A stretch of DNA of 64,000 nt from positions 13,206,001-13,270,000 of the forward strand of contig NC_091285.1 in NCBI RefSeq assembly GCF_032444005.1, given 5' to 3'. A model generated the notes under the pieces. That model saw only the letters and a program-made list of their open reading frames with translations. It was not told the origin of the DNA and made no database searches. The stretch comes from Ranitomeya imitator (Eukaryota). This document shows positions 1 through 64,000 of this stretch, piece by piece. The position numbers and the translations under genes were made by a program. Position 1 is the first letter of the stretch. Each line of letters opens with the position of its first letter.

Positions 1-124
1 TGTAGTATATAGCAGGATATGGAGAAGTTACAGCAAAATATAGCGTTATACAGCAATATATGGGGGTACACAGTAGGATATAGGGGGCAAATAGCAATGT
101 ATGGGGGTATACAGAACTATGTGT

Positions 125-545
125 ATCTGTGATTTCTCTCGGTCTCCCGCCGCCATTGTTCTGAGCAGGAGGTCACCGGGGAGGACTCAGGGCTGTGATT
201 AGATGTAACGTCCTCGCGATAAAAGCGGGAAAATGACAGAAAAAAGTGCGGGAAATTCAAAATCCCCAACAGTTCTGTGCTCCGCCCACATGTGAGGAGA
301 AGCCGCGGCTCCTGCTGCTGGGGGAGGGGCTGGTGATCGCCCGGTGCCCGGATGGCTGCAGTCAGCTCTGCGGGAGCTGGAAACATCGGATACTAAAGGG
401 TTAACACCACGTGTCTGCGGGGAAGTGACCCAGTGGGCGGAGCCATAGCCCTACTGAGTGCTGATTGGCTGAGCGCTGAATATGAAATTCCCGCCCAACG
501 GCTGATAGTTTCTCCCGGTCTTTGTTCTCCTCAGTAACACGTGGT
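125..545 (+). other. 'Empty H4' element, copy 1: CpG-rich module homologous to H4 5' and 3' flanks joined together
   Basis: Left part matches 7660-7792, right part matches 8311-8565, junction at 281/282; GC boxes, CCAAT and E2F-like motifs. Confidence 0.82.
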
Positions 546-1819
546 GCAGAGCGTTATATGGAGGGAAGGAAATGATATATGACCGTATACAGCACTATAT
601 GGAGGGTGTATGGTACTATATGGGCATAGACCGCATCACAGGGAGAAATACAGCACGATATGCAGTGTATGAGGCATTATATCCTGGCACACAGCACTAT
701 ATGGGGTGTATAAGGTATTATATGGGGTGTGACACTATCTGGCGATATATAGCACCATAGATGAGGTATTCAGCACTATATGGCCATATATAGCACACTA
801 TTAATGCTGAGGGCGGACACAGCGCTATTTCCAGGGTATATAGGGATATTCTTCACTATATGTGGACACAGTCATAGAGAAGGGGGAATGGGAGAGAGTC
901 CGCTCACCCCAGTGGCAGCACGGAGAAGCCTGGAACCAGCAGAGGCAAAACAGAGGAACGAAAATCCAGCGAGGCCGGAGGTGTGTACGATAAAATCCAC
1001 ATGTATTATAGAAAGATGAATGAGAAGTGCGCGACAGATCCAGTGTGACCGAGTCCTGCGCCTTCCAGCTCTTCGGGGCCTCAGTCAGGTCACTTATCTT
1101 GGGTCTCAGTCACACTGGAACTGTCGGGCACTTTTAATACATTTTTCTAGAATAAATTTGGATGTTATCGTACATAGCTGCCGCCTCGATGGTTTTTTGT
1201 TCCTCTATATGTGGAAAAAACACTATTTTGATATACACATCAGTATATAGCACTATATGGAGGGTTTCAGCAGTATATGTATCTATACGGCACAATTTGG
1301 AGGGCATAAAACACTACACGGACGTATACAGAACTATATGTTGATATATAGCCCAATACTGACGTTCAGAGCACTATATGGAGATATGTGATAAAGACAA
1401 GGAGCCTCACCTTAAAAATGAGCAGTAGCTGCCCCGTCCTTTTACTGTAAACAATAGCTATAACTCTGTACGTAACCCATTTCTCATGTACAGCACCATG
1501 GAATTAATGGTGCTATATAAATAAATAATATAGGGGCAGAGGATTCATGTTACTGACAGGTGAGCATTTCCCTCACATCCTATGTCTAGATGTTGGGCGC
1601 TATGTGAGGATTGGGGGGATCTAGGGTGATGATGAGGGGGCTCCACTATACAGCTCAGTGTACGGGGATATGGAAGTACAGCGCCCTCAGAGGCCGCTGC
1701 TGCAGAAGCCTCGTGGAGACATGATGTGACCCTTCCTGCATTATCGCAGCACTTCATGCAGGGGGGACCAGCAATATTACTGGGAGTTGTGCTGAGCTTC
1801 CCCTGCATAATGATTGTAT

Positions 1820-4620: not shown

Positions 4621-4671
4621 AAGTTCACACCAGAGATCAGTGGCGTCAGCTCTTGTGATGACTGTGTGGGT

Positions 4672-4687
4672 GGCTCTTAGAAGAGCC
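4672..4687 (-). promoter_or_regulatory. Histone 3' stem-loop (H2A)
   Basis: GGCTCT-TCTA-AGAGCC followed by ACAAGAGCTG (U7-pairing HDE-like). Confidence 0.95.
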
Positions 4688-4720
4688 TTTGGGTTGTGTA
4701 GATAGATGGGTCAGTGTCGC

Positions 4721-5837
<1,117 letters not shown>

Positions 5838-5868
5838 TCTGCTCCGTGCTCTGCACCCACAACCCAAA

Positions 5869-5884
5869 GGCTCTTCTAAGAGCC
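5869..5884 (+). promoter_or_regulatory. Histone 3' stem-loop (H2B)
   Basis: GGCTCT-TCTA-AGAGCC followed by TCAGAGCTG. Confidence 0.95.
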
Positions 5885-5968
5885 ACCCACCCTGTCTATA
5901 TCAGAGCTGTGTCCTGCTCCTCTCCCTGGGAAATATGTCTGCACTTACTGGTACCTCATGTGTTAACG

Positions 5969-7063
5969 TATGGTGCCCCAGGGTCCTGGTCATCACAGTG
6001 GTATTGCTTTCCTCATGGGGAGGGTGATGTTACGTTTGGAGGCAAGAAAGGATAACTGTCGCCAGGTACCACAAACATGCAACGCAGTCATACTCCAGGC
6101 CAGCAGGGGGAGCTTTTGATCATTCATATATATATCTATATCTAGTAGTCTGTAGGGAGAAAGTTAGACAGTATTCTGAGGGTAGAGGGTTGACGGAGCT
6201 GTGCGTGCTGTAATAAGAGCTGCAGCTCCCAGGAAAGAGAATTGGAAGCCGAATAGTACGTTGCAGTGAGCATGCAGGAAAGCAAAGCATGGGATAGAAG
6301 ACCAGAGGGGGACCAGCCCCGAGCAGGCTGCCTCCTTCTGAGGCGCAGATAACTAGGTAGTAAGGACCTCTAAGTCTTACTTCAGAGACCGGCATGACAG
6401 CTAATTGCATGTTACCTATCCGCACCTGCACCTGCACCTACACCCAGGAGACACGGTGACACCTACAGAGCCGGGTTATCTAAGAGACCCTATAAACAGG
6501 CTCAAGTCACTAGTCATGCAGGTTTTGTCCTATCCTATACGGGGGACAGAAAGAGAGAGACCACATCTGTGAGGACCTAACGAGAGGCTTAGCAGTAAGG
6601 GACTACACCACTACAGCGCAAGGGAAGGCTATTGATTTCCACCTGGACCAGGGGACTCTGGAATTGCCTCCAAACCGGCCGGACCCTACCTGCCCTGTGA
6701 TCTGGTTCCCTGGACTGTGGCTGCTGAAATCAACAGTAAGCAAGGTAGAGCCTGCAACCTCGTGTCCTCGTTCTTCTCTGCGCCTCTCATCATACTACCA
6801 TCTACACACCGGGAGCCCTAGGGACACACTTCACTTGTAGGAAGGTATACATCTAGCTGCCATAACATCACCCCAGAGGACCCCTTAAAGCAGCGTCGGT
6901 CACCCTGATCGAATACCACAGGTGGCGTCACGAGCATAAACTTTACCCCTTTAAAGACATTTCCCTTTTACATGGGCGCCATGGACCGGGTCTCCACCGT
7001 GACATCCCCCTGTGAACACCGGACTCGGTACCGAGTACCCCACGGCCCTGGCGGGGCGACTCA
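5969..7063 (+). mobile_element. Solo-LTR-like element (Gypsy type)
   Basis: Starts TATGGTGCCCCAGG, ends GGGCGACTCA; last ~200 bp homologous to the TSD-flanked solo LTR at 52784-53708; no matching TSD found. Confidence 0.62.
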
Positions 7064-7754
7064 CTAGTAAGAGGAAGAGATCAGATCAATGCATCTGGCA
7101 ATAGAGGGTGGGGATTAGAAGATAATGGTAAAATGGGGGGAGGATGCTGAGGGTCCTAGTGAGATGTAGAACGGAGGGGGAACTCCGGAATAGTCTGGCA
7201 GTGGAGCAGCATGAATGATCGGTTGCTCCTCACTTATTGAATCCTGTTCTCTCCCAGAGCGGTGGGTCCTACTGCCCGGTTTCCATTGTTCTGCTGACAA
7301 TAAGTGGAGATGGGGCAGCTAGTTCTGTGTTCAGCGACGTTTCCAGCAGTTTGTCGTCATTCTGATCAGAGCTCTCTGCACCTTGTCACTTATATTCCAC
7401 ACCCTTTGCTCTGCTGACTGTTGAAAGCACCTGGTCAATAAGATCCCAAAGAATGATCTATTTCTAGGTCAGAATCTCACATAGTCATTGAGAAGCTGAT
7501 TAATTGTTTATTGCAGCAGAACCTGTCACTGAGATAAATGAGCAGAGCACAATATTGGGGGTTTATAGCAGTATATGGAGGTTATACACTACTGTATGGA
7601 TGGAGAGAATACAGCACTATAATTGACAGATTGGTGTCTAGATCTGGTTCTCACATTGTAATCACTCGGAGCAGGAGGTCACTGGGGAGAGGAATCGGGT
7701 TTCTGACTATTTTTAGGGTCATCATGGTAGAAGCTGGAAAAAAAACAAAACAAA

Positions 7755-8268
<514 letters not shown>

Positions 8269-8296
8269 GGTCTCTGTTCTGCTAAAACAACACAAA

Positions 8297-8312
8297 GGCT
8301 CTTCTAAGAGCC
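8297..8312 (+). promoter_or_regulatory. Histone 3' stem-loop (H4)
   Basis: GGCTCT-TCTA-AGAGCC followed by GAGGAGAAGCT. Confidence 0.95.
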
Positions 8313-8568
8313 CCCCACATCTTCTGAGGAGAAGCTACAGCTGCCGGGGAGGAGGGGAAGGGGCTGCTGATAGCACTGTGCTGGGATGACTGCCGCTGGG
8401 AACATTGCAGGCTCTAATGGGTTAACACTGGATCTGGATAAATATTCTGGTGCTGCCTGTGGGCGGAGCCATAGCTCATCTTAGTGCTGATTGGCTGAGC
8501 GCTGAATGTGTAAATCCCGCACAATGGCTGGTAATCAATAGTTTCTTCTCTTTGTTCTCTGTGTAACA

Positions 8569-8935
8569 TTATTATTATTATTATTATTTATTATTATAGC
8601 GCCATTTATTCCATGGCGCTTTACATGTGAGGAGGGGTATACATAATAAAACAAGTACAATAATCTTGAAAAATACAAGTCACAACTGGTACAGGAGGAG
8701 AGAGGACCCTGCCCGCGAGGGCTCACAATCTACAAGGGATGGGTGAGGATACAGTAGGTGAGGGTAGAGCTGGCCGTGCAGCGGTTTGGTCAATCGGTGG
8801 TTACTGCAGGTTGTAGGCTTGTCGGAAGAGGTGGGTCTTCAGGTTCTTTTTGAAGGTTTCGATGGTAGGCGAGAGTCTGATATGTTGTGGTAGAGCATTC
8901 CAGAGTAGGGGGGATGCACGAGAGAAATCTTGTAA
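8569..8935 (-). mobile_element. L2 LINE 3' end with (TAA)n tail
   Basis: Minus strand ends CATGTAAAGCGCCATGGAATAAATGGCGCTATAATAA(TAA)n. Confidence 0.8.
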
Positions 8936-8988
8936 CATGTGTCAGGATGGTGGCCCAAAGTAGTTCTCAGGCTGGGAGCTGTGATGAA

Positions 8989-9345
8989 TGGGGTATTTCC
9001 ATCTCTAAGATCTTATCCCAATATGTACTAGGTATAATATTAGCAAATACTTCCAATTAGAAATGTAGCATAGTTCTTCTGATTTACTATGTCTCTTTGC
9101 TCATGTGCAGGGCATTATAGGACTTTCGGTATCCATGATTACAACCACTAGCAACTACCGTAGCTAACTCACTGACTATATCGGTGGATGTAACCATGGA
9201 TACCTAAGATCATGTAATGATTGCACATAGGGAAAGAGACATAGCAAATCAGAAGAACTATTCTACATTTCTAGTTGGAAGTATTTGATAATATTATTAT
9301 ACCTTCTACATATTGGGATAGAATCATGAAGATGGAAATACCCCT
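8989..9345. mobile_element. Palindromic MITE, T2/Kolobok-like (TTAA target)
   Basis: GGGGTATTTCCATCT...AGATGGAAATACCCCT-TTAA with long internal inverted arms. Confidence 0.7.
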
Positions 9346-9472
9346 TTAAATATCTGATAGTGCGGAATAAAGGAATAACCCATATATAGGTCATGATATA
9401 TTATACTTTTTGGGGCTATACAGCACTATATGGAGGGTAAACCACATCATGTGTTCGCAGGGGCGTAACTAC

Positions 9473-9777
9473 ATATGATGAGTGAATATAATCGTTACTC
9501 GAGATTTCTCGAGCATGCTCGGGGGTCCTCTGAGTATTTTTTAGTGCTCGGAGATTGTTTTTCTTGCCGCAGCTGAATGATTTACATCTGTTAGCCAGCA
9601 TAAGTACATGTGGGGATTGCCTGGCTGCTAGGGAATCCCCACATGTACTTATGCTGGCTAACAGATGTAAATCATTTAGCTGCGGCAAGAAAAACTAAAT
9701 CTCCGAGCACTAAATACTCAGAGGACCCCCGAGCATGCTGAGAAATCTCGAGTAACAAGTACATTCGCTCATCACTA
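9473..9777. mobile_element. hAT MITE (TAGTGATGAGC family) inserted in the host TIR
   Basis: Palindromic; TSD GTAACTAC at 9465-9472 and 9778-9785. Confidence 0.85.
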
Positions 9778-10140
9778 GTAACTACCAGTCACAGAGGTCG
9801 CCGCTGGCGAGGGGTTCGGCGACCAAGCCGCCCAGAATGGGGATGCCGCAGCGGCTCAGCAATGTGAAGGATCCGGAAATGAACAAGGTGTACGTGACAG
9901 GCGGCAGTGAGATGTGTCTGCTACCCGTGTGTCGCCATCCTGGGCCCCCAGCGTCCCTGGCTCCCTGTGACACCAGCCCCATTTCCTCCCTGCTCTCCCA
10001 TGCCCCATGTCCTCGTAGGTCCGCAGGTTCAGGACATTGTGCTCCTCTGGGCCCCCGTACACGCCTTGTCCCTAGTCCCCCAATGCTCCCCATCTCCCAT
10101 GCCCTGAGTTCTCCTGCACCCCCATTCATTCCCTGCCCCT

Positions 10141-10330
10141 TATAATAATAATAATTTTATTTATATAGCGCCAACATATTCCGCAGCGCTTTACAAATTA
10201 TAGAGGGGACTTGTACAGACAATAGACATTACAGCATAACAAAAATCACAGTTCAAAATAGATACCAATAGGAGTGAGGGCCCTGCTGCTCGCAAGCTTA
10301 CATACTAAGAGGAAAAAGGGAGACACGGGA
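10141..10330 (-). mobile_element. L2 3' end
   Basis: (TAA)n then TTTATTTATATAGCGCCAACATATTCCGCAGCGCTTTACA. Confidence 0.8.
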
Positions 10331-10519
10331 GGTGGAGAGCCCGTGTGACCCGTCTGCCCTGCTCTCAAGTCTCCCCATCTAGCCTGTCCTCGTAATGGCT
10401 GTGCCCCTTTCTTCCCTGCTCCCCTGTCTTCCCCTGTCCCCTTGCAGCCCCATCTCCCTGTGCGTCCCTATCTACTCTGCCCTCGTAGTCCCCTTGTATC
10501 CTCTTGTGCCTGTGGTTGT

Positions 10520-10675
10520 TAGGGAATCCCCACATCATGTTCTTATGCTGGCTAACAGATGTAAATCATTCAGCTGCGGCAAGAAAAACTAAATCTCTGA
10601 GCACTAAAAAATACTCAGAGGACTTCCGAGCGTGCTCGAGAAATCTTGAGTAACGAGTATATTCGCTCATCACTA
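10520..10675. mobile_element. Half copy of the TAGTGATGAGC MITE
   Basis: Near-identical to the right half of 9473-9777, ends TTCGCTCATCACTA. Confidence 0.75.
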
Positions 10676-13583
10676 TTTATTTTCTATTATACATTACATA
10701 ACAATGGCCGTACGGGAGACAAATATATACCAGGATGGGGCACCTCATAGTTGCACCACTGAGGTCACACTATACAACTTTACAATAAAGCTATAGTGTG
10801 CAAAATTAATAGGGAAAATGTGAATTTGGGTGGAAAATATTTTGGCTTCGGGGGGGCCACCCATTAGAAAGTTTGCACCCGGGGCCCATAACTTTGTAGT
10901 TACACCACTGTGTGTTCGTATACTGCAGTGTTTGGGGCAGAACGGAATGAGGAATATACAGCGCTATATGGAGGGTATACAGTACAGTGTGGAAAGCGTA
11001 TAGGCATCAATAGCACAATGTGTGTATACGGCACTAGATGAACGGGATTGTGAAGGAAACCATTTTGTCATCCACCTTGTTCCCTGAATTAACCATGTAC
11101 ATGGACTTTACTCCAAGCATCCCCCAACCTTGAAGAACAAGTTCTGGACTCTGTATGACAGCAGGCCGTATCCATTGTGCTTGTCAGGATCACCCTGAAC
11201 ACTTACAATTCTATTGTTTACCTGTCTATATAATCCTGTGTGAGTCTAAATAAGCAGAAATTTACATTATGCACAAAATAATAGAAAAAAGCTGAATCCT
11301 CACATTAGCATTTATTTCCATATATACAGAGGCGCTGGGAGCTGCACACTCTATTCCAGATGAAAACATGAACAAAATAGACATTTTTGGAGTAAAAAGG
11401 AAAGAATCGGCTGCTCAAAAACTATCAGGGTCTGCATTTTCATTTACAAACTGGAATAGTAAGGCTATGCACACACGTTGTGGATTTTGATGCGTTTCCA
11501 CAGCGTTTTTGGACGCATGGAATTGCATCAAATCCGCAGTGTAGTGCACAATCAATGTTAGTCAATGGGAAGTTGAGATTTTTTTTGTGCACATGCTGCG
11601 GAAAAATACGCGCGGATTTGCAGCGTTTTATTTTGCGCAGCATGTCAATTCTTTTTGTGGATCTGCAGCGTTTCTGCACCCATTAACTTACATTGAGTAG
11701 GGCAGATCCACAGCAAAACCTCAGGTTTAAAAAGATCTGCGGTTTTGCTGTGGGTTGTGAGAAATGCTGGAGATCGGGAGGAGGAAGAGTGTGTGTGCGG
11801 TGACTATGTGTGTGGGTGGAGAAGATGTGTGTGTGTGTCTGCGGGTGTGTGGTGGTGTGTGCAGGTTTGTGTGTAGGCAGGCATCGTTCGATGGGACTAC
11901 TAGTCCTATCCGGCTAAGCCTGCTACAGTGACAGCTAGCCGATGATGGGACAGTCGTAGTCCCATCATCTGGCTACTGTGATCAAGTGTAAAAAAAAAGC
12001 AAAAAACACATATACAGTACATACTCACTATACAGCTAATCCCCAAGGCCCTCAATCAAAAAAATAAATATAATAATAAACCAACAATATACTCCCTGGT
12101 GCGATGCAATCCATTTAATAACGAGTGTCCCACGACGATCTCTCGTGTAGAGCTGTCACATCGCCGTTTCTGGAGCGGCTGTGAGCTAGTGTTTGTAACC
12201 AGGGGGGCCAATGTCCATGGTCCCTTCTTAGGCTATTAATATCAGCCCGCAGCTGTCTGCATAGCCTTTTCTGGCTATTATTTAATTTTTTTTTTAGGGC
12301 CCCCATATTTTAATAGCCAGTAAAGGCTAAATATACAGCTGCGGGCTGATATTCACAGCCTGGGAAGATCCATGGGTATTAACCCCTTCCTAGGTTATAA
12401 ACATCGCTCCACAGTCGCTGGCTTTCCCTCTCAAGTAAATAAATTAAAGTGGGCACCATCAACTAATATAGGGGTAATAGGTAAAGTTGGGATCACTTTG
12501 ATGCATGTGAAGCATAATATGTCATAAGAACTAGAGAAAAAGGCACATGCATAAAAACAGGATTACCACAATGTCTGAACAAAGTACAAAAGTTTTTATT
12601 TCCAAACCAGAAAACCACACACAATTCTAAAAAAACATCTAAAACATCCCAAAGGGATCATACATATTAGATCCAATATTTAGAATATAATATTCACCAG
12701 AATTATACACCTTTGGCTACACAAATATAGTATTTTTGTTAAATTATAGCATAATACTCCAAGCTGGTATTGCTAATGTATTGCCATCCATAATATGGTT
12801 GGTACCTAAAGCCTAAATAGTGGCATCAACATATTGCAATAACATTAGTAGTTACTAGGGTTTAAGTGTCTCAGGACCATTCACAATAACACTGGATTAC
12901 CCAAAAAATGCCTAAACAAAGGGTACATGTGTCCACGCAAGGGCAAACAGGTGGATATCGAAAGCAAGGCAAGTTAATACTTCACCCCAACCAGGCCACT
13001 GAAGTCGCCCCATAACCCTAGAAGCAGCAGTGCAGCCAGGTGGGAAGAGAGGACCCGCACGTTCCGACACTCGAAGTGTCTTTTTCAAGACACTCGCCTT
13101 TCTTCCTCTAAGGCCTCTTTTCCACTTGCGAGAAAAACGGATGAGTGCAATCCGATAAAAAAATCGGATTGCACTCGGACCAATGTTATTCAATAGGTGA
13201 CATTCCATTTGCGATTTTTTTCTCAGCTGAAATCGGACTGAGAAAAAAAATCACAGCATGCTGCGATTTGCTGCGAGTCTCGGACGAGACTCGCCAATGC
13301 AAGTCAATGGGTGCGAGAAAAAAAAACGCATGGATTACGGACTATCCGTATTCCATCCGTTTTTTACGGATACCTTACCATTCTGTGGCATAGGACACTG
13401 TAAATGGTCCTGTAAATGACTGTAAAAAATAGTTGCAGAGAAAAACAACGGATTGCATACGGATGTCATACGGATGTAAAACGGATGGTGCGATTAAAAA
13501 AATCGCATTGAACTCGCATGACAAATGCATACTTTTCATCCCTTTTTTTCGGTCCAGATTACGGACCGTTTTTTTTCTCGCAA

Positions 13584-33694: not shown

Positions 33695-34714
33695 TCAATA
33701 CTTTGTAATATATCCTTTGTTGGCAATGACAGAGGTCAAACGTTTTCTGTAAGTCTTCACAAGGTTGCCACACACTGTTGTTGGTATGTTGGCCCATTCC
33801 TCCTTGCAGATCTCCTCTAGAGCAGTGATGTTTTTGGCTTTTCGCTTGGCAACACGGACTTTCAACTCCCTCCAAAGGTTTTCTATAGGGTTGAGATCTG
33901 GAGACTGGCTAGGCCACTCCAGGACCTTGAAATGCTTCTTACGAAGCCACTCCTTCGTTGCCCTGGCGGTGTGCTTTGGATCATTGTCATGTTGAAAGAC
34001 CCAGCCACGTTTCATCTTTAATGCCCTTGCTGATGGAAGGAGGTTTGCACTCAAAATCTCACGATACATGGCCCCATTCATTCTTTCATGTACCCGGATC
34101 AGTCGTCCTGGCCCCTTTGCAGAGAAACAGCCCCAAAGCATGATGTTTCCACCACCATGCTTTACAGTAGGTATGGTGTTTGATGGATGCAACTCAGTAT
34201 TCTTTTTCCTCCAAACACGACAAGTTGTGTTTCTACCAAACAGTTCCAGTTTGGTTTCATCAGACCATAGGACATTCTCCCAAAACTCCTCTGGATCATC
34301 CAAATGCTCTCTAGCAAACTTCAGACGGGCCCGGACATGTCCTGGCTTAAGCAGTGGGACACGTCTGGCACTGCAGGATCTGAGTCCATGGTGGCGTAGT
34401 GTGTTACTTATGGTAGGCCTTGTTACATTGGTCCCAGCTCTCTGCAGTTCATTCACTAGGTCCCCCCGCGTGGTTCTGGGATTTTTGCTCACCGTTCTTG
34501 TGATCATTCTGACCCCACGGGGTGGGATTTTGCGTGGAGCCCCAGATAGAGGGAGATTATCAGTGGTCTTGTATGTCTTCCATTTTCTAATTATTGCTCC
34601 CACTGTTGATTTCTTCACTCCAAGCTGGTTGGCTATTGCAGATTCAGTCTTCCCAGCCTGGTGCAGGGCTACAAATTTGTTTCTGGTGTCCTTTGACAGC
34701 TCTTTGGTCTTCAC
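33695..34714 (-). CDS. Tc1 DD34E transposase, uninterrupted from codon 2 (native ATG at 35935 separated by the MITE; alternative in-frame ATG at 35014)
   Basis: HTH region, [23 protein letters not shown]; 34 residues between the second D and the E. Confidence 0.9.
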
Positions 34715-35924
34715 TAGTGTTGAGCATTCCGATACCGCAAGTATCGGGTATCGGCCGATACTTGCGGTATCGGAATTCCGATACCGAGATCCGATACTTT
34801 TGTGGTATCGGGTATCGGTATCGGATACATAGGGATCTGTAAAATAAAGAATTAAAATAAAAAATATTGATATATTTACCTCTCCGGCGGCCCCTGGACT
34901 CAGCGCGGGTAACCGGCAGGCTTCGTTGTTCAAAATCAGCGCTTTTAGGACCTGAGAATCACGTCCCGGCTTCTGATTGGTCGCGGGCCGCCCATGTGAC
35001 CGCCACGCGACCAATCACAAGCCGCGACGTCACCGCAAGCTATTGACGCGCTCATTTTTAAAAATGAGCGCGTTAATGGCTTTGAAAGACATAGCGGCTT
35101 GTGATTGGTCGCATGGCCGCGACCAATCACAAGCCGCGACGTCACCGCAAGCTATTGACGCGCTCATTTTTAAAAATGAGCGCGTTAATGGCTTTGAAAG
35201 ACATAGCGGCTTGTGATTGGTCGCATGGCCGCGACCAATCACAAGCCGCGACGTCACCGCAAGCTATTGACGCGCTCATTTTTAAAAATGAGCGCGTTAA
35301 TGGCTTTGAAAGACATAGCGGCTTGTGATTGGTCGCATGGCCGCGACCAATCACAAGCCGCGACGTCACCGCAAGCTATTGACGCGCTCATTTTTAAAAA
35401 TGAGCGCGTTAATGGCTTTGAAAGACATAGCGGCTTGTGATTGGTCGACCAATCACAAGCCGCTATGTCTTTCAAAGCCATTAACGCGCTCATTTTTAAA
35501 AATGAGCGCGTCAATAGCTTGCGGTGACGTCGCGGCTTGTGATTGGTCGCGTGGCGGTCACATGGGCGGCCCGCGACCAATCAGAAGCCGGGACGTGATT
35601 CTCAGGTCCTAAAAGCGCTGATTTTGAACAACGAAGCCTGCCGGTTACCCGCGCTGAGTTCAGGGGCCGCCGGAGAGGTAAATATATCAATATTTTTTAT
35701 TTTTATTCTTTATTTTACACCTCCCTATGGATCCCAGGGCCTGAAGGAGAGTTTCCTCTCCTTCAGACCCTGGGAACCATGAGAATACCTTCCGATACTT
35801 GATGTCCCATTGACTTGTATTGGTATCGGATATCGGTATCGGCGATATCCGATATTTTTCGGGTATCGGCCGATACTATCCGATACCGATACTTTCAAGT
35901 ATCGGACGGTATCGCTCAACACTA
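34715..35924. mobile_element. hAT MITE (TAGTGTTGAGC TIR) with internal 112-bp palindromic tandem units
   Basis: Perfect 8-bp TSD GTCTTCAC (34707-34714, 35925-35932); CGATAC subterminal repeats. Confidence 0.93.
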
Positions 35925-43302: not shown

Positions 43303-43333
43303 NNNNNTCCGTGCTCTGCACCCACAACCCAAA

Positions 43334-43349
43334 GGCTCTTCTAAGAGCC
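43334..43349 (+). promoter_or_regulatory. Histone 3' stem-loop (H2B) followed by an H2A-type downstream flank
   Basis: GGCTCT-TCTA-AGAGCC then CACCACAAGAGCC, the H2A-type pattern. Confidence 0.93.
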
Positions 43350-44089
43350 ACCCACCGCATCACCACAAGAGCCGATACCACTAATATCTGGTGTGATGTT
43401 CTGGATGTATGGATTGTATAGCCAAGATTCTGTGTAACATTGTGCTGCACATGGGATATATAGTGGATCAGGCAGTGGGTATAATCCAGTCACTATTGGG
43501 TTAGAACCGGCTGTGACTGCCACTTACTGGTCTGGTGTCCATCCAGTCTTGTACCATCCTTTCCACCAACCTCCATGGTTGTAGTGTGTGGTGAGCCACT
43601 GGAAGGTGACCACACAGCATTAGATGAGTATTTGTAGGTCCTGGTGTGAATACAAGTAAAACGGTCTCAAAAATGGGCACCGAAGGGTGTTAATGAAAGG
43701 GTTACATGACTTTGGGCCACACATCAAACCCAAGTCTCCAGCCTGGCCCAAATGGGCTCTGGGCATCAAAGTAGGCAAAGAGCAGATTTTCACAGGTAGT
43801 GTGAGATAAGTGACTCAAAGTCATTTAACCCCTTAAACAGTTACTTATTCAAATGGCCAAAATCGGTAGTTTGCCCACTTTAGATACCACAACAATTCTG
43901 GTGCCCAGAACCCATTTGGACCAGGCTGTACGGAGCTGGGTTGGATGCAGGGCATCACTGTATTCTTAGCGTGAGATCAGTGACCCAAAGACATACTGAT
44001 AGAGAATTTAGATTGTGAGCCCCAACAATGTGTGCGCTGCAGAATGTTAGCGCTATATAAAAATAAAGATGATTAATTATAAAGCGATT

Positions 44090-44500: not shown

Positions 44501-44844
44501 ACCCTTTGATTAACACCCTTCAGTGCCCATTTTTGTAGCAGTTTTTTCACATCAGGTCACCTCGCTGCAATGTATGTTATTATTGTGATGCTTATTTTTT
44601 GTTAAACCTATTTAAAAAAAAAAAAAACAAGAAAAAAATTGCTGAATAAAAGAAACCAACTCCAGCATCGTTAGGTTGGCAAAGGGGGTATCATCCTGTC
44701 ATTATTTACAGAGACAAAGAACAAAAAAAAAACCATATTGTGATGTGTGACCCTCATAAATAGCAGTATATACCGCCTTATGATGTAATAGTCACATAGT
44801 GAGGAATCTACAAGATCCCCTCAGTCTGTCAGGAGCCGCCGCCA

Positions 44845-45240
44845 TGACACCACGTGTTACTGAGGAGACCAAAGAGCGGGAGAAACTATCAGCCGTTGGG
44901 CGGGAATTTCATGATCAGCGCTCAGCCAATCAGCACTCAGTAAGGCTAAGGCTCCGCCCATAGTCACTTCCCCGCAGACGTTTGGTGTTAACCCTTTAGT
45001 GTCCGATGTTCCCAGCTCCCGCAGATCAGACTGCAGCCATCCGGGCACCGGGCGATCACCAGCCCCTCCCCCAGCAGCAGGAGCCGCGGCTTCTCCTCTC
45101 ATGTGGGCGGAGCACAGAACTGTTGGGGATTTTGAATTTCCCGCATTTTTTCGCGACGACGTTACATCTAGTCACAGACCTGAGTCCTCCCCGGTGACCT
45201 CCTGCTCGGAACAATGGCGGCGTGAGACCGAGAAATCACT
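44845..45240 (-). other. 'Empty H4' element, copy 2
   Basis: Reverse-complement near-copy of 125-545; junction 45110/45111; upstream flank 45700-45960 matches H4 upstream flank 7255-7500. Confidence 0.82.
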
Positions 45241-45261
45241 GGTCAGGGGAGCAAAGGGTTA

Positions 45262-45705
45262 TATCCTGCTGTATACCCCCATATAGTGCTGTATACCCCC
45301 ATATAGTGCTATATACTCTCCATATCCTGCTGTATACCCCCATATAATGCTATATACTCTCCATATCCTGCAATATACCCCCATATAGTGCTATATACTC
45401 TCCATATCCTGCTGTATACCCCCATATAGTGCTATATACTCTCCATATCCTGCTGTATGCCCCCATATAGTGCTATATACTCTCCATATCCTGCTGTATA
45501 CCCCCATATAGTGTTATTATATACTCTCCATATCCTGCTGTATACCCCCATATAGTGCTATATACTCTCCATATCCTGCTGTATACCTCCATACAGTGCT
45601 ATATACCCTTCATATCCTGCTGTATACCCCCATATAGTGCTATATACTCTCCATATCCTGCTGTATACCCCCATATAGTGCTATATACCCTTTATATCTC
45701 CATAC
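45262..45705. repeat. 41-bp minisatellite, about 10 copies
   Basis: ATATAGTGCTATATACTCTCCATATCCTGCTGTATACCCCC units. Confidence 0.93.
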
Positions 45706-46714
45706 TGTGCTTCTCCATTAATGACAATGTGAGGTTCAGACCTAGAAATAGATCAGTGTTTAATTCATCATTGATCAGGAGCCTCCACTGCTCTGGGGGG
45801 TGAAGGGTGCGTAATATCAGGGGAATATAAGCAAGAAATTGCAGAGAGCTCCGATCAGAACCAGCAGACACTGCTGAAAATTAACAGCCCATCTCTGGCT
45901 ACAACCAGCAGAACACTGGAGCAGACGGCACTAGGACCCAGCGCTCTGGGAGAGAATGGGACCCAGTGAGAGGTGACTGAGCAGGAGCCTCCCATCCCAT
46001 GTAACCTAATGGGATCCTCTAACTTCCCAACATCATTATAAAGTGGAGCCGAAACTGGATCCCATATTCTAGATGTTGCTCTATCGCTCATGAGGCCGCA
46101 TACATTGGGATCGCAGGATTTTCTCCTTATACACCCGAAAATCTTGTTTGCCTTTGCAGCTGCTGCCTGACTTTACTGATATAGCGCCAGGATATTCCTC
46201 AGCCCTTTACATACATTACTGCTGTCCCCAATGGGGCTCAATCTAAATTCCCCATCAGTATTGTCTTTGTAAATGTGGGAGGAAATCGGAGAGAGCCACA
46301 CACGGGGGGAACGTACAAACCCCAGGCAGATTATGTTTTGTTCCATTTATTGTGTATGCATCAATAGTGTCACTCCATCTTAGGTGCATTACTCCTCTAT
46401 CAACATTCTTATTTCCCGAGTGTCTCATTCAGTCATCTTCAGATTATTCTGTAATATTGTACTGTGAGGATCAGATTTTAGTCTACTTAGTTTGGAATTC
46501 GCGAATACTGACTAAATCCCATCCACAAGGTCAATAATGAAAGATATTGAATTAGTCCCAACAGATCCTTGTGGTCCCCAATGCTCCCAGTACAGATCCT
46601 TGTGGTCCCCACTCAAACCAGATCACATTTAGGGAATGTTCTATTTACAACACCCACGTCCCCTGTCTTAAGTTCTTTACCCATCTGAATGGTGTCTAGC
46701 CCCAGCTTCTAGAG

Positions 46715-48974: not shown

Positions 48975-50096
<1,122 letters not shown>

Positions 50097-54089: not shown

Positions 54090-54240
54090 ATTCACTTACA
54101 GCCCGAGAGCCGCCATGTGTTACACTGAGAACAAAGAGGGAGAAACTATCAGCCATAGTGTGGGAATTTCAAATTCAGTGCTCAGCCAATCAGCACCATG
54201 GCTCCGCCCACAGGCAGTGTCAGATTAGAGTTAAGCAGTA
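54090..54240 (-). promoter_or_regulatory. Isolated GC-box/CCAAT/E2F-like module (right half of the empty-H4 element) downstream of H3
   Basis: GGGCGGAGCC...CTGATTGGCTGAGC...TTTGAAATTCCCAC...ATGGCGGC on the minus strand; homologous to 430-540 and 8455-8565. Confidence 0.6.
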
Positions 54241-54609: not shown

Positions 54610-55160
<551 letters not shown>

Positions 55161-56969: not shown

Positions 56970-57390
56970 ACCACGTGTTACTGAGGAGAACAAAGAGCGG
57001 GAGAAACTATCAGCCGTTGGGCGGGAATTTCATATTCAGTGCTCAGCCAATCAGCACTCAGTAGGGCTATGGCTCCGCCCACAGGGTCACTTCCCCGCAG
57101 ACACGTGGTGTTCACCCTTTAGTGCCCGATGTTTCCAGCTCCCGCAGAGCAGACTGCAGCCATCCGGGCACCGGGCGATCACCAGCCCCTCCCCCAGCAG
57201 CAGGAGCCGCGGCTTCTCCTCACATGTGGGCGGAGCACAGAACTGTTGGGGATTTTGAATTTCCCGCACTTTTTCCTGTCATTTTCCCGCGTTTATCACG
57301 AGGACGTTACATCTAGTCACAGCCCTGAGTCCTCCCCGGTGACCTCCTGCTCAGAACAATGGCGGCGGGAGACTGATAAATCACAGATGC
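56970..57390 (-). other. 'Empty H4' element, copy 3
   Basis: Reverse-complement near-copy of 125-545; junction 57233/57234. Confidence 0.82.
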
Positions 57391-58582
57391 ACATAGTTCT
57401 GTATACCCCATATCCTACTGTATACCCCAATATATTGCCGTATAGCCTCCATATCTTGCTGTATACCCCTATATTGTGCTGTATCTCCCCCTTTATACCC
57501 CCATATAGTGCTGTATAAATCCATATTATACCCCTGTATAGCGCTATACACCCTCCTGTGCTTTGCTCTTGTAGCTCCGGCTGCGATAAACCAGTGGGAT
57601 TCAGACCCAGAAATAGATCAGTGATTGTCAGTTTCTCATTGATCAGGAGCCTCTGGTCCGGGGAGTGACCGCTGCGTTATTTCATTAGAACATTTTGAAC
57701 AGAACAATGAGAAACTGCTGAAAATATCGCTAAGCGCTGAAAGAGTTAACAGCCCATCTGCGCCTATTACCAGGAGACCACTGGAGTCTGGCGGCACTAG
57801 GACCCAGCGCTCTGGGATCAGTGGAAGGTGACAGCGGGAGGTGTTGCCGCTTTTCTTAATATTTGATTTTTATAATGTGCAACAAACTGGATTCCGTATT
57901 GTAGATGTTTCCCCTCTATAAATAGGGCCGGGTCCTCCCTCTGTGCTCCTGGGCGCCTTGTGTTACTCCTCTATTGTACTTGTCTATATTCGCCCCTTTC
58001 ATGTGTAAAGCGCCATGGAATAAATGCGGCTATAGAAATGTATAATAATAATAATGGCATTGTAATATCAAGGTCAGTTTATTATCCCGCATAGTGGTGT
58101 CAATAGCAAAGGCTGACACTTTACTCAGTCCCATATACAAGGCCATTGTTGGTTATAAAAAAAAAAAATTGGTCCCAACATTAACTTGGGTCCCCACTGC
58201 TCCCACTACAGATCCTTGCAGTCCCCACTCCATATTGCATTTAATGTTCTATTTACACCAGTTTCCTTTCTTAGCCAGTTCTTCCATCTGCATATAGTGT
58301 ATATATTCTATATTCCCAGGTTCTGGAGCGCCGGTTTAAGGCTGTTGTGTGGTTCAGTATTATCAGTCCAGATATCACATTGGCCGCATTACAAATATCC
58401 AGATTGGCACTTACCTTTTCCTAGACACCCAACATGTGGGTTGAGACATTTTTCAGGAATCTATACTGATGGTTGGTAATTAAATTACTTTCCAAAACAT
58501 TTTGCAAATCATCCCTTTCAATGCCGGTCAGTGCAGCAGGACACAGACGAGCAGCCACAGCTCTGATGTAGACGGGGTGGGT

Positions 58583-58629: not shown

Positions 58630-59750
<1,121 letters not shown>

Positions 59751-62740: not shown

Positions 62741-63474
62741 AGACCCTGTAATTCAAGTTTCAGTTTATGCTGTAAATATTCAAGTTTGTAAATGAAATTG
62801 CACACACTGGTATTTTTTGTTGAGCATCCGATTATTCTTTCTTCATTTTCAGCTTAAAAACTGATATTTTGATCATGTTTACATCTGGAATAGAGTGTGC
62901 AGCTCCCAGCGCCTCTGTATATATGGAAATAAAGGCTATTGTGAGGATTCAGCTTTTTTTCGATTATTTTGCGCATAATGTAAATTTCTTCTTATTTGGA
63001 CTCACACAGGATTATATAGACAAGTATGCAAATTAATTGTAAGTGTTCAGGGTGATCACAATGGATACGGCCTGCCCTCATACAGAGTCCAGGACTTGTT
63101 CTTCAAGGTTGGGGGATGCTTGGAGAAAAGTCCATGTACATGATTAATTCAGGGAACAAGGTGGATGACAAAATGGTTTCCTTCACAATCCCGTTCATCT
63201 AGTGCCGTATACAGAAATTGTGCTATTGATGCCTATACGCTTTCCACACTGTACTGTATACCCTCCATATAGCGCTGTATATTCCTGACATGAACACCAA
63301 ATAGTACTATGGATCCACCCCCACACAGCACCAGATTCCTTAACCCCCAAGACCCTCAGTGTTAACCCATTAGAGCCTGCAATGTTTCCAGCTGCAGTCA
63401 TCCCAGCACAGTGCTATCAGCAGCCCCTTCCCCTCCTCCCCAGCAGCTGTAGCTTCTCCTCAGAAGATGTGGGG

Positions 63475-63490
63475 GGCTCTTAGAAGAGCC
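63475..63490 (-). promoter_or_regulatory. Histone 3' stem-loop (H4)
   Basis: GGCTCT-TCTA-AGAGCC. Confidence 0.95.
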
Positions 63491-63515
63491 TTTGTGTTTT
63501 AGCAGAACAGAGACC

Positions 63516-64000
<485 letters not shown>

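What the first reader, a model, noticed from the sequence alone, without database searches (positions are those of the whole stretch)
125..545. Conserved 'empty H4 loci': three copies of H4's flanks fused with the gene missing
Seen: the CpG-rich element at 125-545 (also 44845-45240 and 56970-57390, minus strand) aligns left to the H4 upstream region (GAGCAGGAGGTCAC...GCGGGAAATTCAAA...AACAGTTCTGTGCT, 7660-7792). It continues directly into the H4 downstream region (CC[C/G]CCCACAT...TGAGGAGAAGC...GGGTTAACAC...GGGCGGAGCCATAGC...CTGATTGGCTGAGCGCTGAA, 8311-8565). What is missing is 7793-8310 (~518 bp): CCAAT box, TATA, H4 CDS and stem-loop, with the HDE left behind. Homology extends further upstream (7255-7500 vs 45700-45960). 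Two copies sit downstream of H2B, where H4 sits in the left unit. All three share the same junction, are near-identical and keep many CpGs that the real H4 3' flank lacks. Inference: a gene-less module was amplified with the array and may be maintained as a regulatory element (promoter, enhancer or histone-locus-body seed). The alternative is that it is the ancestral site into which an H4 cassette was inserted.
Basis: partly seen in the sequence, partly recalled or inferred. Interest (0 to 1): 0.82.

Follow-up and report, generated by a model that had tools for sequence, protein, structure and literature searches.

The report
Histone H4 slots with gene deleted
In this poison-frog histone gene cluster, three repeat units carry the two flanks of the histone H4 gene joined directly together with the gene cut out; this is most likely an old deletion relic copied along with the array, and a regulatory role for it is possible but not shown.

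Summary
Three roughly 420-bp elements share one identical junction: e1 at 125-545 (+), e57 at 56970-57390 (-), and e45 at 44845-45240 (-). They align colinearly with the H4 upstream flank (7666-7792) and the H4 downstream flank (8311-8568). Exactly 7793-8310 (518 bp) is absent. That stretch holds the CCAAT, GC and TATA boxes, the CDS and the stem-loop.

- **Origin.** The element keeps the post-stem cleavage site and the HDE in histone register. The H4 segment has no target-site duplication, terminal repeats or microhomology at its ends. One blunt deletion therefore fits better than insertion of H4 into an empty site.
- **Age.** Contigs from RNA libraries of two other species bridge the same junction, so the empty form is old.
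- **Constraint.** e1 and e57 lie in one large duplicated block and diverge like their spacer (96.9% versus 95-96%). e45 and e57 are 94.6% identical in the element but only 81.9% in the unique upstream spacer (p = 3e-6). e and the filled flanks diverge like spacer (about 71%). This fits homogenisation among empty copies, or constraint acquired late.
- **Function.** The element is modestly CpG-island-like, with CpG o/e of 0.68-0.81. It carries E2F, NF-Y and Sp1-type motifs and appears in RNA libraries. Transcription and function are unproven.

The scan had already noted "H4 ghosts" 179 kb upstream in this genome.

The parts
125..545 (+). Empty H4 slot e1. Left-flank part 160-281, junction 281|282, right-flank part 282-539. 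It lies 1.4 kb upstream of H3 (1955-2365).
56970..57390 (-). Empty H4 slot e57. Junction 57234|57233. It lies 1.2 kb downstream of H2B(-) 58630-59010 and about 1.95 kb upstream of H3(-).
44815..45262 (-). Empty H4 slot e45. Junction 45111|45110. This is the most complete copy: its left edge (AACCCTTTGC...) and right edge (GTGTCATGGCGGCGGC) resemble the contigs of the other species. It lacks 25 bp that hold the distal E2F-type site.
7666..7792 (+). Left flank of the filled H4 slot F1. It is homologous to e1 160-281 and holds GCGGGAAATTCAAA at 7759-7772.
7793..8310 (+). The 518 bp present in F1 and absent from e: CCAAT 7796-7800, GC box 7812-7821, TATA 7900-7907, H4 CDS 7957-8268, and most of the stem-loop 8297-8312.
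8311..8568 (+). Right flank of F1. It holds the cleavage-site region CCCACA 8314-8319, the HDE-like GAGGAGAAGC 8326-8335, and the promoter-like core 8450-8568 (GC box 8461-8470, inverted CCAAT 8487-8499).
63357..64000 (-). Second filled H4 slot, F2, 96.8% identical to 7778-8430. Its downstream core has decayed and is replaced by satellite. The window ends inside its promoter.
54117..54215 (-). Solo copy of the roughly 100-bp promoter-like core (GC box, inverted CCAAT, TTCCC.C, CTCTTTGTTCTC, GTAACAC), 320 bp downstream of H3(-).
7247..7489 (+). Islands of upstream spacer homology shared by the filled and empty slots. They match 45956-45720 and 57817-57594 on the minus strand, and show that the slots are positional paralogues.

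Best explanation
**What it is.** The element is the H4 slot of a histone repeat unit (H3, divergent H2A/H2B, H4) from which one blunt 518-bp deletion removed the H4 proximal promoter, the coding sequence and the stem-loop. The distal upstream region was fused to the post-stem 3' flank.

**How it spread.** The event happened once, before this species separated from at least two relatives. The H4-less slot then multiplied passively as the repeat units duplicated; e1 and e57 are an example. The empty copies were also kept alike by exchange or gene conversion. The element is a unique GC-rich island bracketed by a 20-bp satellite on both sides, and that arrangement would favour such exchange.

**What it does.** The fused flanks hold E2F/CHR, GC-box and inverted CCAAT motifs, so the relic looks like a small orphan CpG island and may fire weak transcription. 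The present data do not require a selected function.

**Shown versus inferred.**
- Shown: the colinear flanks, the identical junction, the retained 3' signal, membership in the duplicated block, presence in other species, and the divergence figures.
- Inferred: the direction (deletion), homogenisation as the cause of the e45/e57 similarity, and the lack of function.
For: **Deletion from a filled slot**
- The junction and colinearity are established.
- All e copies share the same indels against F1: a 15-bp insertion at e1 360-374 and a 3-bp loss after CCCACA.
- 3' signal register: the H2A/H2B HDE AGAGCTG starts 19 nt after the stem. Pelobates H4 has AGAGCTGT at +18. F1 H4 has GAAGCTAC in the same register. 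e keeps CCCACA and GAGGAGAAGC 3 nt closer to the junction.
- There is no TSD, terminal repeat or microhomology at 7793/8310. The longest shared words are 4-5 nt, which is the shuffled expectation.

**Passive spread and no visible constraint**
- e1 and e57 sit inside a block that runs 1-2459 = 57483-54516 and continues 4625-5923 = 50193-48890.
- Element identity is 96.9% against 95.0-96.3% for the spacer, Fisher p 0.2-0.3.
- CpG turnover is 4 of 26 sites in the element against 10 of 42 in the flanks, p 0.54.
- e versus F1 is 70.6-70.9% in the flanks and 71.7-72.5% in the upstream spacer. The H4 flanks therefore carry no long-term constraint.

**Homogenisation among e copies**
- e45/e57 is 94.6% in the element and 81.9% upstream, p 2.6e-6. 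The high-identity tract, about 400-500 bp, is bounded by satellite.

**Age**
- An organism D contig covers 101-389 and an organism C contig covers 93-332. Both bridge the junction at 281|282.

**Not a coding or structured-RNA gene**
- No Rfam match, folding z-score -0.5, and the antisense ORFs have no Pfam hit and are frame-shifted between copies.
Against: - CpG loss is asymmetric between e and the filled flanks (11 columns against 1). CpG o/e is 0.68-0.81 against 0.07-0.56. Both suggest that the e lineage was protected from methylation for a long time, which a purely inert relic need not be.
- Several transcriptome-sized libraries of the same species hold sampled words only inside the element and none in its flanks. 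One of them covers 299-490 and 543-682 but not the H3 upstream spacer.
- The e45/e57 contrast could reflect purifying selection instead of gene conversion.
- The four CpGs shared by e and F1 all sit in factor-type motifs.
- The direction of the change rests on the 3'-signal argument. No outgroup locus with alignable flanks could be obtained.
Confidence: 0.58

Rival explanations
1. Orphan CpG-island promoter or enhancer. After the deletion, the fused H4 flanks were kept because they bind cell-cycle factors (E2F/DREAM at GCGGGAAATTCAAA, NF-Y at CTGATTGGCTGAG, Sp1 at GGGCGGAGCC, USF/Myc at CACGTG). They would then act as a promoter of a non-coding transcript, as an upstream element for the H3 gene 1.4 kb downstream, or as a site that helps recruit histone-locus-body factors.
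For: - The element passes CpG-island criteria: GC 0.56-0.57, o/e 0.68-0.81.
- Motif map: E2F consensus at 225-232 and 248-255, CHR-like 256-261, GC boxes at 282, 435 and 491, inverted CCAAT at 464, E-boxes at 408 and 538.
- The four CpGs conserved between e and F1 lie in these motifs, and CpG decay is asymmetric at 11 columns against 1.
- e45/e57 is 94.6% in the element against 81.9% in the spacer.
- RNA-library assemblies hold the element: 4 of 4 runs listed from study P10 (organism D), 4 of 4 listed from study P11 plus one from P13 (organism C), one run of organism E, and several of organism A. Four other runs carrying organism A's species label hold none.
- 50-nt contigs of organism E match the core with 0-1 mismatches.
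Against: - e1/e57 diverge like their spacer, in CpG sites too.
- e and F flanks diverge like spacer, so whatever the flanks do in a working H4 gene is not conserved.
- If e had been constrained ever since the deletion, the e-F distance should be well below the spacer distance. It is not.
- The distal E2F site is deleted in e45 and decayed in F1. The core is lost downstream of the second H4 gene.
- H3 upstream spacer is also covered in the organism C and D runs, at a depth of the same order (10.7-17.6 against 12-51). Multi-copy DNA or read-through transcripts could therefore explain the contigs.
- Many other stretches of the window pass the same CpG filter.
Confidence: 0.27
2. Ancestral empty site. 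The fused form is the original spacer, and a promoter-to-stem-loop H4 segment was inserted into one copy of it, giving the filled slots.
For: - The missing piece is a neat functional unit, running from 3 nt before the CCAAT box to the stem-loop.
- The e copies are richer in CpG than the filled flanks, as an older unmethylated sequence might be.
- No outgroup could be aligned to settle polarity.
Against: - The HDE and the cleavage-site region, which only make sense behind a stem-loop, lie outside the would-be insert. They are present in e in the right register.
- The segment ends have no TSD, terminal repeats or other insertion signature.
- A filled H4 follows H2B on the same strand in gene tables of two other frog assemblies.
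- The slot follows H2A/H2B in every unit, as expected if all slots once held H4.
Confidence: 0.08
3. The right-hand core is not histone DNA at all. It would be the promoter and first exon (ATGGCGGCGGC...) of a neighbouring non-histone gene, or the head of a small repeated element, that was captured next to H4 and copied with it. On this reading the 'element' is a fusion of an H4 upstream region with foreign promoter DNA.
For: - A solo copy of the core lies downstream of H3(-) at 54117-54215, outside any H4 context. There it is followed by ATGGCGGCTCTCGGGCT and then GTAAGT.
- e45 continues with ATGGCGGCGGCTCC, and organism E continues with GTGTCAGGGCGGCG.
- Architecture: GC box, inverted CCAAT, an E2F-like site and a pyrimidine-rich possible start region, with no TATA.
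- In organism E the core sits in several different contigs.
Against: - The open frames after the ATG are 17 codons or fewer and differ between copies.
- The window holds only five copies, all inside the histone array.
- Nothing identifies a gene or a transposon.
- The CCAAT context is a generic NF-Y box.
- This reading does not change the deletion reading for the junction.
Confidence: 0.07

Closest known systems
Mixed quartet/quintet histone arrays of Drosophila virilis and the americana subgroup, where some repeat units lack H1 (reviewed in PMC13525598, read)
   Same: Within one tandem or clustered replication-dependent histone locus, some repeat units lack one of the genes. Both unit types are amplified side by side.
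   Different: Here the missing gene is H4, a core histone, and the organism is a vertebrate. The empty slot is a clean fusion of the gene's own flanks with a defined 518-bp gap. The empty and filled slots have diverged about 29% from each other. I did not examine the D. virilis junctions.
Unprocessed (deletion-type) pseudogenes and relics in vertebrate histone clusters under birth-and-death evolution (PMC13525598)
   Same: A duplicated histone gene copy was inactivated and left in the cluster. A recognisable gene part remains, namely the cleavage site and the HDE.
   Different: No coding sequence is left at all. The relic has itself become a repeated unit, is shared between species, and is more alike between copies than the nearby spacer.
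Orphan CpG islands, that is, non-promoter or unannotated-promoter CpG islands of vertebrates (from general knowledge)
   Same: A stretch of about 420 bp with GC 0.56-0.57 and CpG o/e 0.68-0.81. It holds Sp1, NF-Y and E2F-type motifs, has no annotated gene, and is present in RNA-library assemblies.
   Different: Its methylation state, chromatin state and initiation are unknown. The CpG excess over the local background (0.57) is modest. Recent CpG turnover equals that of the flanking spacer.
Solo LTRs and empty target sites of mobile elements (a structural analogy only)
   Same: 'Filled' and 'empty' versions of one site coexist, and the flanks are colinear.
   Different: There are no repeats at the ends of the missing piece, no TSD and no mobility signature. 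Part of the gene's own signal lies outside the missing piece.

Membership tests
Histone repeat-unit variant lacking one gene | Lies inside a replication-dependent histone cluster, at the position the missing gene holds in other units | tested here: met
   e57 and e45 follow an H2A/H2B pair on the H2B strand, as H4 does at 7957-8268. e1 and e57 precede H3.
Histone repeat-unit variant lacking one gene | Flanks colinear with both flanks of a filled slot, with a single gap | tested here: met
   Filled 7666-7792 and 8311-8568 match e1 160-281 and 282-539, with a gap at 7793-8310. Upstream islands are colinear too.
Histone repeat-unit variant lacking one gene | The variant unit is itself repeated or inherited | tested here: met
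   Three copies have an identical 23-nt junction. Contigs of two other organisms bridge the junction.
Deletion-type gene relic (unprocessed pseudogene) | Retains part of the gene's own sequence or signals in the original order | tested here: met
   CCCACA and GAGGAGAAGC sit behind the junction, in the same register as the HDEs of H2A, H2B and F1 H4 here and of Pelobates H4.
Deletion-type gene relic (unprocessed pseudogene) | Evolves like neutral spacer | tested here: inconclusive
   True for e1/e57 and for e against F1. Not true for e45/e57, at 94.6% against 81.9%, p 2.6e-6.
Empty target site of an inserted H4 segment | Insertion signature at the ends of the insert (TSD, terminal repeats) | tested here: not met
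   Longest shared words are 4-5 nt, equal to the shuffled expectation. There are 0 nt of microhomology.
Empty target site of an inserted H4 segment | The insert is self-contained, so the complete 3'-processing signal travels with the gene | tested here: not met
   The HDE and the cleavage-site region lie outside 7793-8310 and are present in the empty form.
CpG-island promoter / orphan CpG island | Composition: at least 200 bp, GC at least 0.5, CpG o/e at least 0.6 | tested here: met
   e1 0.56/0.76, e57 0.57/0.68, e45 0.57/0.81. The window mean o/e is 0.57, and about 45 other stretches also pass.
CpG-island promoter / orphan CpG island | Unmethylated and open in germ line or soma | not testable with these tools
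   Only indirect evidence exists. CpG decay is asymmetric against the filled flanks, 11 columns to 1. Recent CpG turnover equals that of the spacer.
CpG-island promoter / orphan CpG island | Transcription starts in it | tested here: inconclusive
   RNA-library contigs cover it in four organisms. Contigs carry no strand information, depths are low, and H3 upstream spacer is also covered in two runs.
Structured non-coding RNA gene | Match to a described RNA family, or folding beyond shuffled controls | tested here: not met
   No Rfam hit at E up to 1. Folding z-score -0.52.
Histone orphon | A solitary histone gene away from the array | tested here: not met
   No histone coding sequence is left, and the element lies inside the array.

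The most novel reading that the evidence does not exclude
The fused H4 flanks are a selected, factor-bound orphan CpG island. After losing its gene, the slot was retained across dendrobatid species as an E2F/NF-Y/Sp1-bound, weakly transcribed element. It would serve the histone locus, for example as an upstream promoter or enhancer for the H3 gene behind it, or as a docking site that helps assemble the histone locus body. The empty form would spread to other slots by gene conversion.
Probability: 0.2. Interest if true: 0.65.

Novelty: new variant of a known kind. Interest (0 to 1): 0.38.

Why it matters
Histone arrays are a textbook case for concerted versus birth-and-death evolution. This locus gives a dated, sequence-exact example of a core-histone gene being removed from a repeat unit, with the H4-less unit then amplified and kept homogeneous. 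The window has five H2A/H2B pairs but only two H4 and two H3 genes, so such losses change gene stoichiometry within a cluster.

If the relic proves to be unmethylated, factor-bound and transcribed, it would show that the distal flanks of a histone gene can sustain a CpG island on their own. It would also offer a natural "promoter-and-gene-less" control for working out which sequences recruit histone-locus factors in a vertebrate. If it proves inert, it is an ordinary relic and a useful marker for tracing array history in poison frogs.

Tried and rejected
- **MAFFT on whole regions** put the left flank over the H4 coding sequence. I replaced it with a cheap-long-gap alignment.
- **Structured RNA or small-RNA gene:** rejected. 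No Rfam hit and no unusual fold.
- **Protein coding:** rejected. The antisense ORFs of 95 and 129 aa have no Pfam match and are frame-shifted between copies. The ATG-led frames behind the core stop after 17 codons or fewer.
- **Mobile element or insertion of H4:** no TSD, no terminal repeats, no microhomology.
- **Slippage between TTCT repeats:** the predicted product does not match the junction (sequence inspection).
- **Outgroup search:** look-up of this H2B protein returned DNA only for a Pelobates locus, which I recognise from memory as GCA_933207985.1. Its order is H1-H3-H2A-H2B-H4(-). Its H4 flanks share nothing with e or F beyond the CDS and stem-loops. Two closer assemblies were listed without DNA.
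- **Metagenome scan for the core:** 0 hits.
- **Paper search for the motifs:** only generic NF-Y boxes turned up.
- **Core as an inverted copy of the H4 promoter CCAAT module:** 18-19 of 22 positions match, z 4.4-6.4. I judged this motif-level only.
- **Joint 535->1221 in organisms C and D:** read as satellite similarity, not a splice. The ends are AA..AA, and 1221-1264 is satellite.
- **13-nt match of the Pelobates H4 3' flank to the core tail:** E 0.8, so treated as chance.

Full report
**Setting.** The window is part of a frog histone cluster. Earlier notes of this scan call the genome a poison frog.

| Gene or element | Coordinates | Strand |
|---|---|---|
| H3 | 1955-2365 | + |
| H2A | 4721-5128 | - |
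| H2B | 5457-5837 | + |
| H4 (F1) | 7957-8268 | + |
| H2A/H2B pair, inverted | about 42.2-43.3 kb | |
| H2B | 48975-49355 | - |
| H2A | about 49.7-50.1 kb | + |
| H3 | 54610-55020 | - |
| H2B | 58630-59010 | - |
| H2A | 59334-59750 | + |
| H4 (F2) | 63516-63827 | - |

The three elements are e1 at 125-545 (+), e57 at 56970-57390 (-) and e45 at 44845-45240 (-).

- Self-blast gives e1 160-281 = 7666-7792 (74.8%, E 8e-9) and e1 430-504 = 8456-8530 (86.7%, E 3e-18).
- An alignment that allows one long gap puts F1 7666-7792 on e1 160-281 and F1 8311-8568 on e1 282-539. Exactly 7793-8310 is left out. e57 behaves the same way.
- The 23-mer across the junction occurs three times in the window and nowhere else.
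- The missing 518 bp run from 3 nt before the CCAAT box (7796) to within the stem-loop (8297-8312). They include the GC box, the H4-type CTGGTCC site, the TATA box and the CDS.
- Colinear homology continues upstream in three islands shared by F1 and e45, two of which have short matches in e57. A 20-bp satellite follows, then the left flank.
- The empty and filled elements are therefore positional paralogues of one slot of the repeat unit, not a dispersed 400-bp repeat. The remaining H2B-to-slot spacers do not align.

**Direction of the change.** Three points favour deletion over insertion.
- The histone 3' signal has two parts. In this cluster the H2A and H2B HDE (AGAGCTG) begins 19 nt after the stem. 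In a Pelobates H4 gene it begins at +18. In F1 H4 the GAAGCTAC core is in the same register. The empty elements keep CCCACA and GAGGAGAAGC directly behind the junction, 3 nt closer. A spacer that had never held H4 has no reason to carry the downstream half of an H4 processing signal at the right place.
- The ends of the 518-bp piece show no target-site duplication, no terminal direct or inverted repeats and no microhomology. That fits a blunt deletion and no known insertion mechanism.
- All e copies share small indels against F1, so the event happened once.

My recollection of the U7 5' sequence served only as a lead. The register argument rests on the comparisons above. No outgroup with alignable flanks could be obtained, so polarity remains inferred.

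**Age and spread.**
- e1 and e57 lie in one duplicated block, 1-2459 = 57483-54516, and the block continues through H2A/H2B.
- RNA-library contigs of organism D (375 nt, covering 101-389) and organism C (280 nt, covering 93-332) bridge the 281|282 junction. No indel is listed there among those shown (10 indels were not shown).
- Organism E holds only the core, 433-534.
- The left edge in organisms C and D and the right edge in organism E resemble e45. e45 is therefore the most complete copy. In e1 and e57, satellite has replaced both edges.
- The empty form predates the split of these species. The species names are coded, so no date can be given.

**Tests of 'maintained'.**

| Comparison | Element or flanks | Adjacent spacer | Test |
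|---|---|---|---|
| e1 vs e57, identity | 96.9% | 95.0-96.3% | Fisher p 0.2-0.3 |
| e1 vs e57, CpG sites changed | 4 of 26 | 10 of 42 | p 0.54 |
| e45 vs e57, identity | 94.6% (20 of 372 mismatched) | 81.9% (36 of 199) | p 2.6e-6 |
| e vs F1, identity | 70.6-70.9% | 71.7-72.5% | not significant |

- The H4 flanks carry no long-term constraint across the e/F split.
- If e had been constrained ever since the deletion, the e-F distance should be clearly below the spacer distance. It is not.
- The simplest reading is recent homogenisation among the empty copies. This could be gene conversion, or double exchange in the satellites that bracket this 400-500-bp unique island.
- Constraint acquired late in the e lineage is not excluded.

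**Composition and motifs.**
- The e copies have GC 0.56-0.57 and CpG o/e 0.68-0.81. The F flanks have 0.56 (left), 0.29 (right) and 0.07 (F2 right). Local spacers have 0.40-0.54, and the window as a whole has 0.57.
- Of 27 CpG columns in e, F1 keeps 4, shows TG/CA at 8 and TA at 3. Only 1 of 4 F1-specific CpGs reads CA in e.
- Over the long term, the e lineage therefore lost far fewer CpGs than the filled flanks.
- The four shared CpGs sit in GCGGGAAA, GGGCGGAGCC, GAGCGCTG and CCCGC.
- e1 carries two exact E2F consensus sites, at 225 and 248. The second abuts a CHR-like TTCAAA. It also carries three GC boxes, an inverted CCAAT box in a strong NF-Y context, an E2F-like TTCCCGCC and two CACGTG boxes.
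- The distal E2F site is deleted in e45 and decayed in F1. The whole downstream core is lost behind F2. A working H4 gene therefore does not need these elements.

**RNA evidence.**
- The element's sampled words are held by RNA-type libraries. These are all 4 runs listed from one study of organism D, 4 of 4 from one study plus 1 from another of organism C, one run of organism E, and several runs of organism A or of unlabelled origin. Four other organism-A runs hold none.
- Comparing the word shares for 100-1500 and for 150-545 shows that several of these libraries hold words only inside the element.
- One run (X13) covers 299-490 and 543-682 at depth 3-8 and nothing on the H3 upstream spacer. 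In organisms D and C the element is at depth 12-51 and the H3 upstream spacer at 10.7-17.6.
- Contigs carry no strand, the array is multi-copy, and H2B lies upstream on the same strand. Read-through or contaminating DNA cannot be excluded. The tool itself warns that presence in an RNA library does not show transcription.

**What it is not.**
- There is no Rfam family and no special fold.
- There is no conserved ORF.

**The core.** A roughly 100-bp core also occurs alone, 320 bp downstream of H3(-) at 54117-54215. It consists of a GC box, an inverted CCAAT box, an E2F-like site, a pyrimidine run and GTAACAC. It is followed by ATGGCGGC in two copies, and once by GTAAGT. This raises the minor possibility that the right flank descends from a captured promoter and first exon, or from a small repeat. 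I could not take this further.

**Comparison with what is known.**
- The nearest described situation is the coexistence of repeat units with and without one gene in a single histone locus, as in the H1-less quartets among quintets of Drosophila virilis.
- More generally, it fits birth-and-death decay of histone copies (PMC13525598).
- New here: the lost gene is a core histone in a vertebrate. The loss is a clean fusion of the gene's own flanks. The relic has become a repeated, cross-species, CpG-island-like unit that is more alike between copies than the nearby spacer.
- First readers of this scan had already flagged "H4 ghosts" 179 kb upstream and several "ghost H1" loci in the same genome. 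I could not inspect those sequences.

**Verdict.**

| Question | Estimate |
|---|---|
| Observation | confirmed |
| Origin by a single deletion | about 0.8 |
| Passive relic homogenised by array dynamics | about 0.58 |
| Selected regulatory element | about 0.27 |
| Ancestral empty site | about 0.08 |

Interest is moderate. This is a tidy and apparently undescribed variant of histone-array evolution, and the functional question can be settled with methylation, CAGE and binding data.

Noticed in passing
window 54117-54215 (-): A solo copy of the promoter-like core (GC box, inverted CCAAT, TTCCC.C, CTCTTTGTTCTC, GTAACAC) lies 320 bp downstream of H3(-), outside any H4 context. It is followed by ATGGCGGCTCTCGGGCT and then GTAAGT, which looks like a start codon plus a splice donor.
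   Followed up: partly
window 942-1020: A short stretch in the e1-H3 spacer has high depth in RNA-library contigs of three organisms (up to 713). All covering contigs in three runs (none in the fourth) read C instead of G at 978, and long loose ends begin at 942. It is probably a fragment of an expressed repeat or transposon.
   Followed up: no
window 1473-1536: This stretch has extreme depth in all four RNA-library runs (up to about 69,500), with many different loose ends on both sides. It is a widely dispersed short repeat next to an AT-rich microsatellite.
   Followed up: no
window 1-124, 546-800, 45260-45700, 57393-57526, 7546-7621: A 20-bp satellite (TACAGCAATATATGGGGGTA and variants, also seen as a 41-bp period) brackets every empty slot and precedes the filled one. 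It is expanded to about 440 bp beside e45.
   Followed up: partly
window 8570-11460 versus 63357-62777: The two filled H4 slots share downstream DNA (10950-11458 = 63286-62777, 89.6%) that the empty slots lack. Empty slots are followed by H3. This suggests a higher-order unit of the form pair - H4 - long spacer - pair - empty slot - H3. The window holds 5 H2A/H2B pairs but only 2 H4 and 2 H3 genes.
   Followed up: partly
window 44848 and 43308-43660: Homology of e45 with e1 and e57 stops at 44848. Beyond it lie unrelated spacer, transposon-like DNA and an inverted H2B/H2A pair. This fits the array reversal noted earlier on this window.
   Followed up: no
L001 (Pelobates locus) 6904-11522: The spadefoot toad unit reads H1(+) H3(+) H2A(-) H2B(+) H4(-). 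H4 is inverted relative to its orientation in this window.
   Followed up: no
window 33695-35014 (-): An intact-looking 439-aa ORF with the look of a Tc1/mariner-type transposase lies in the transposon-rich stretch between the histone units.
   Followed up: no
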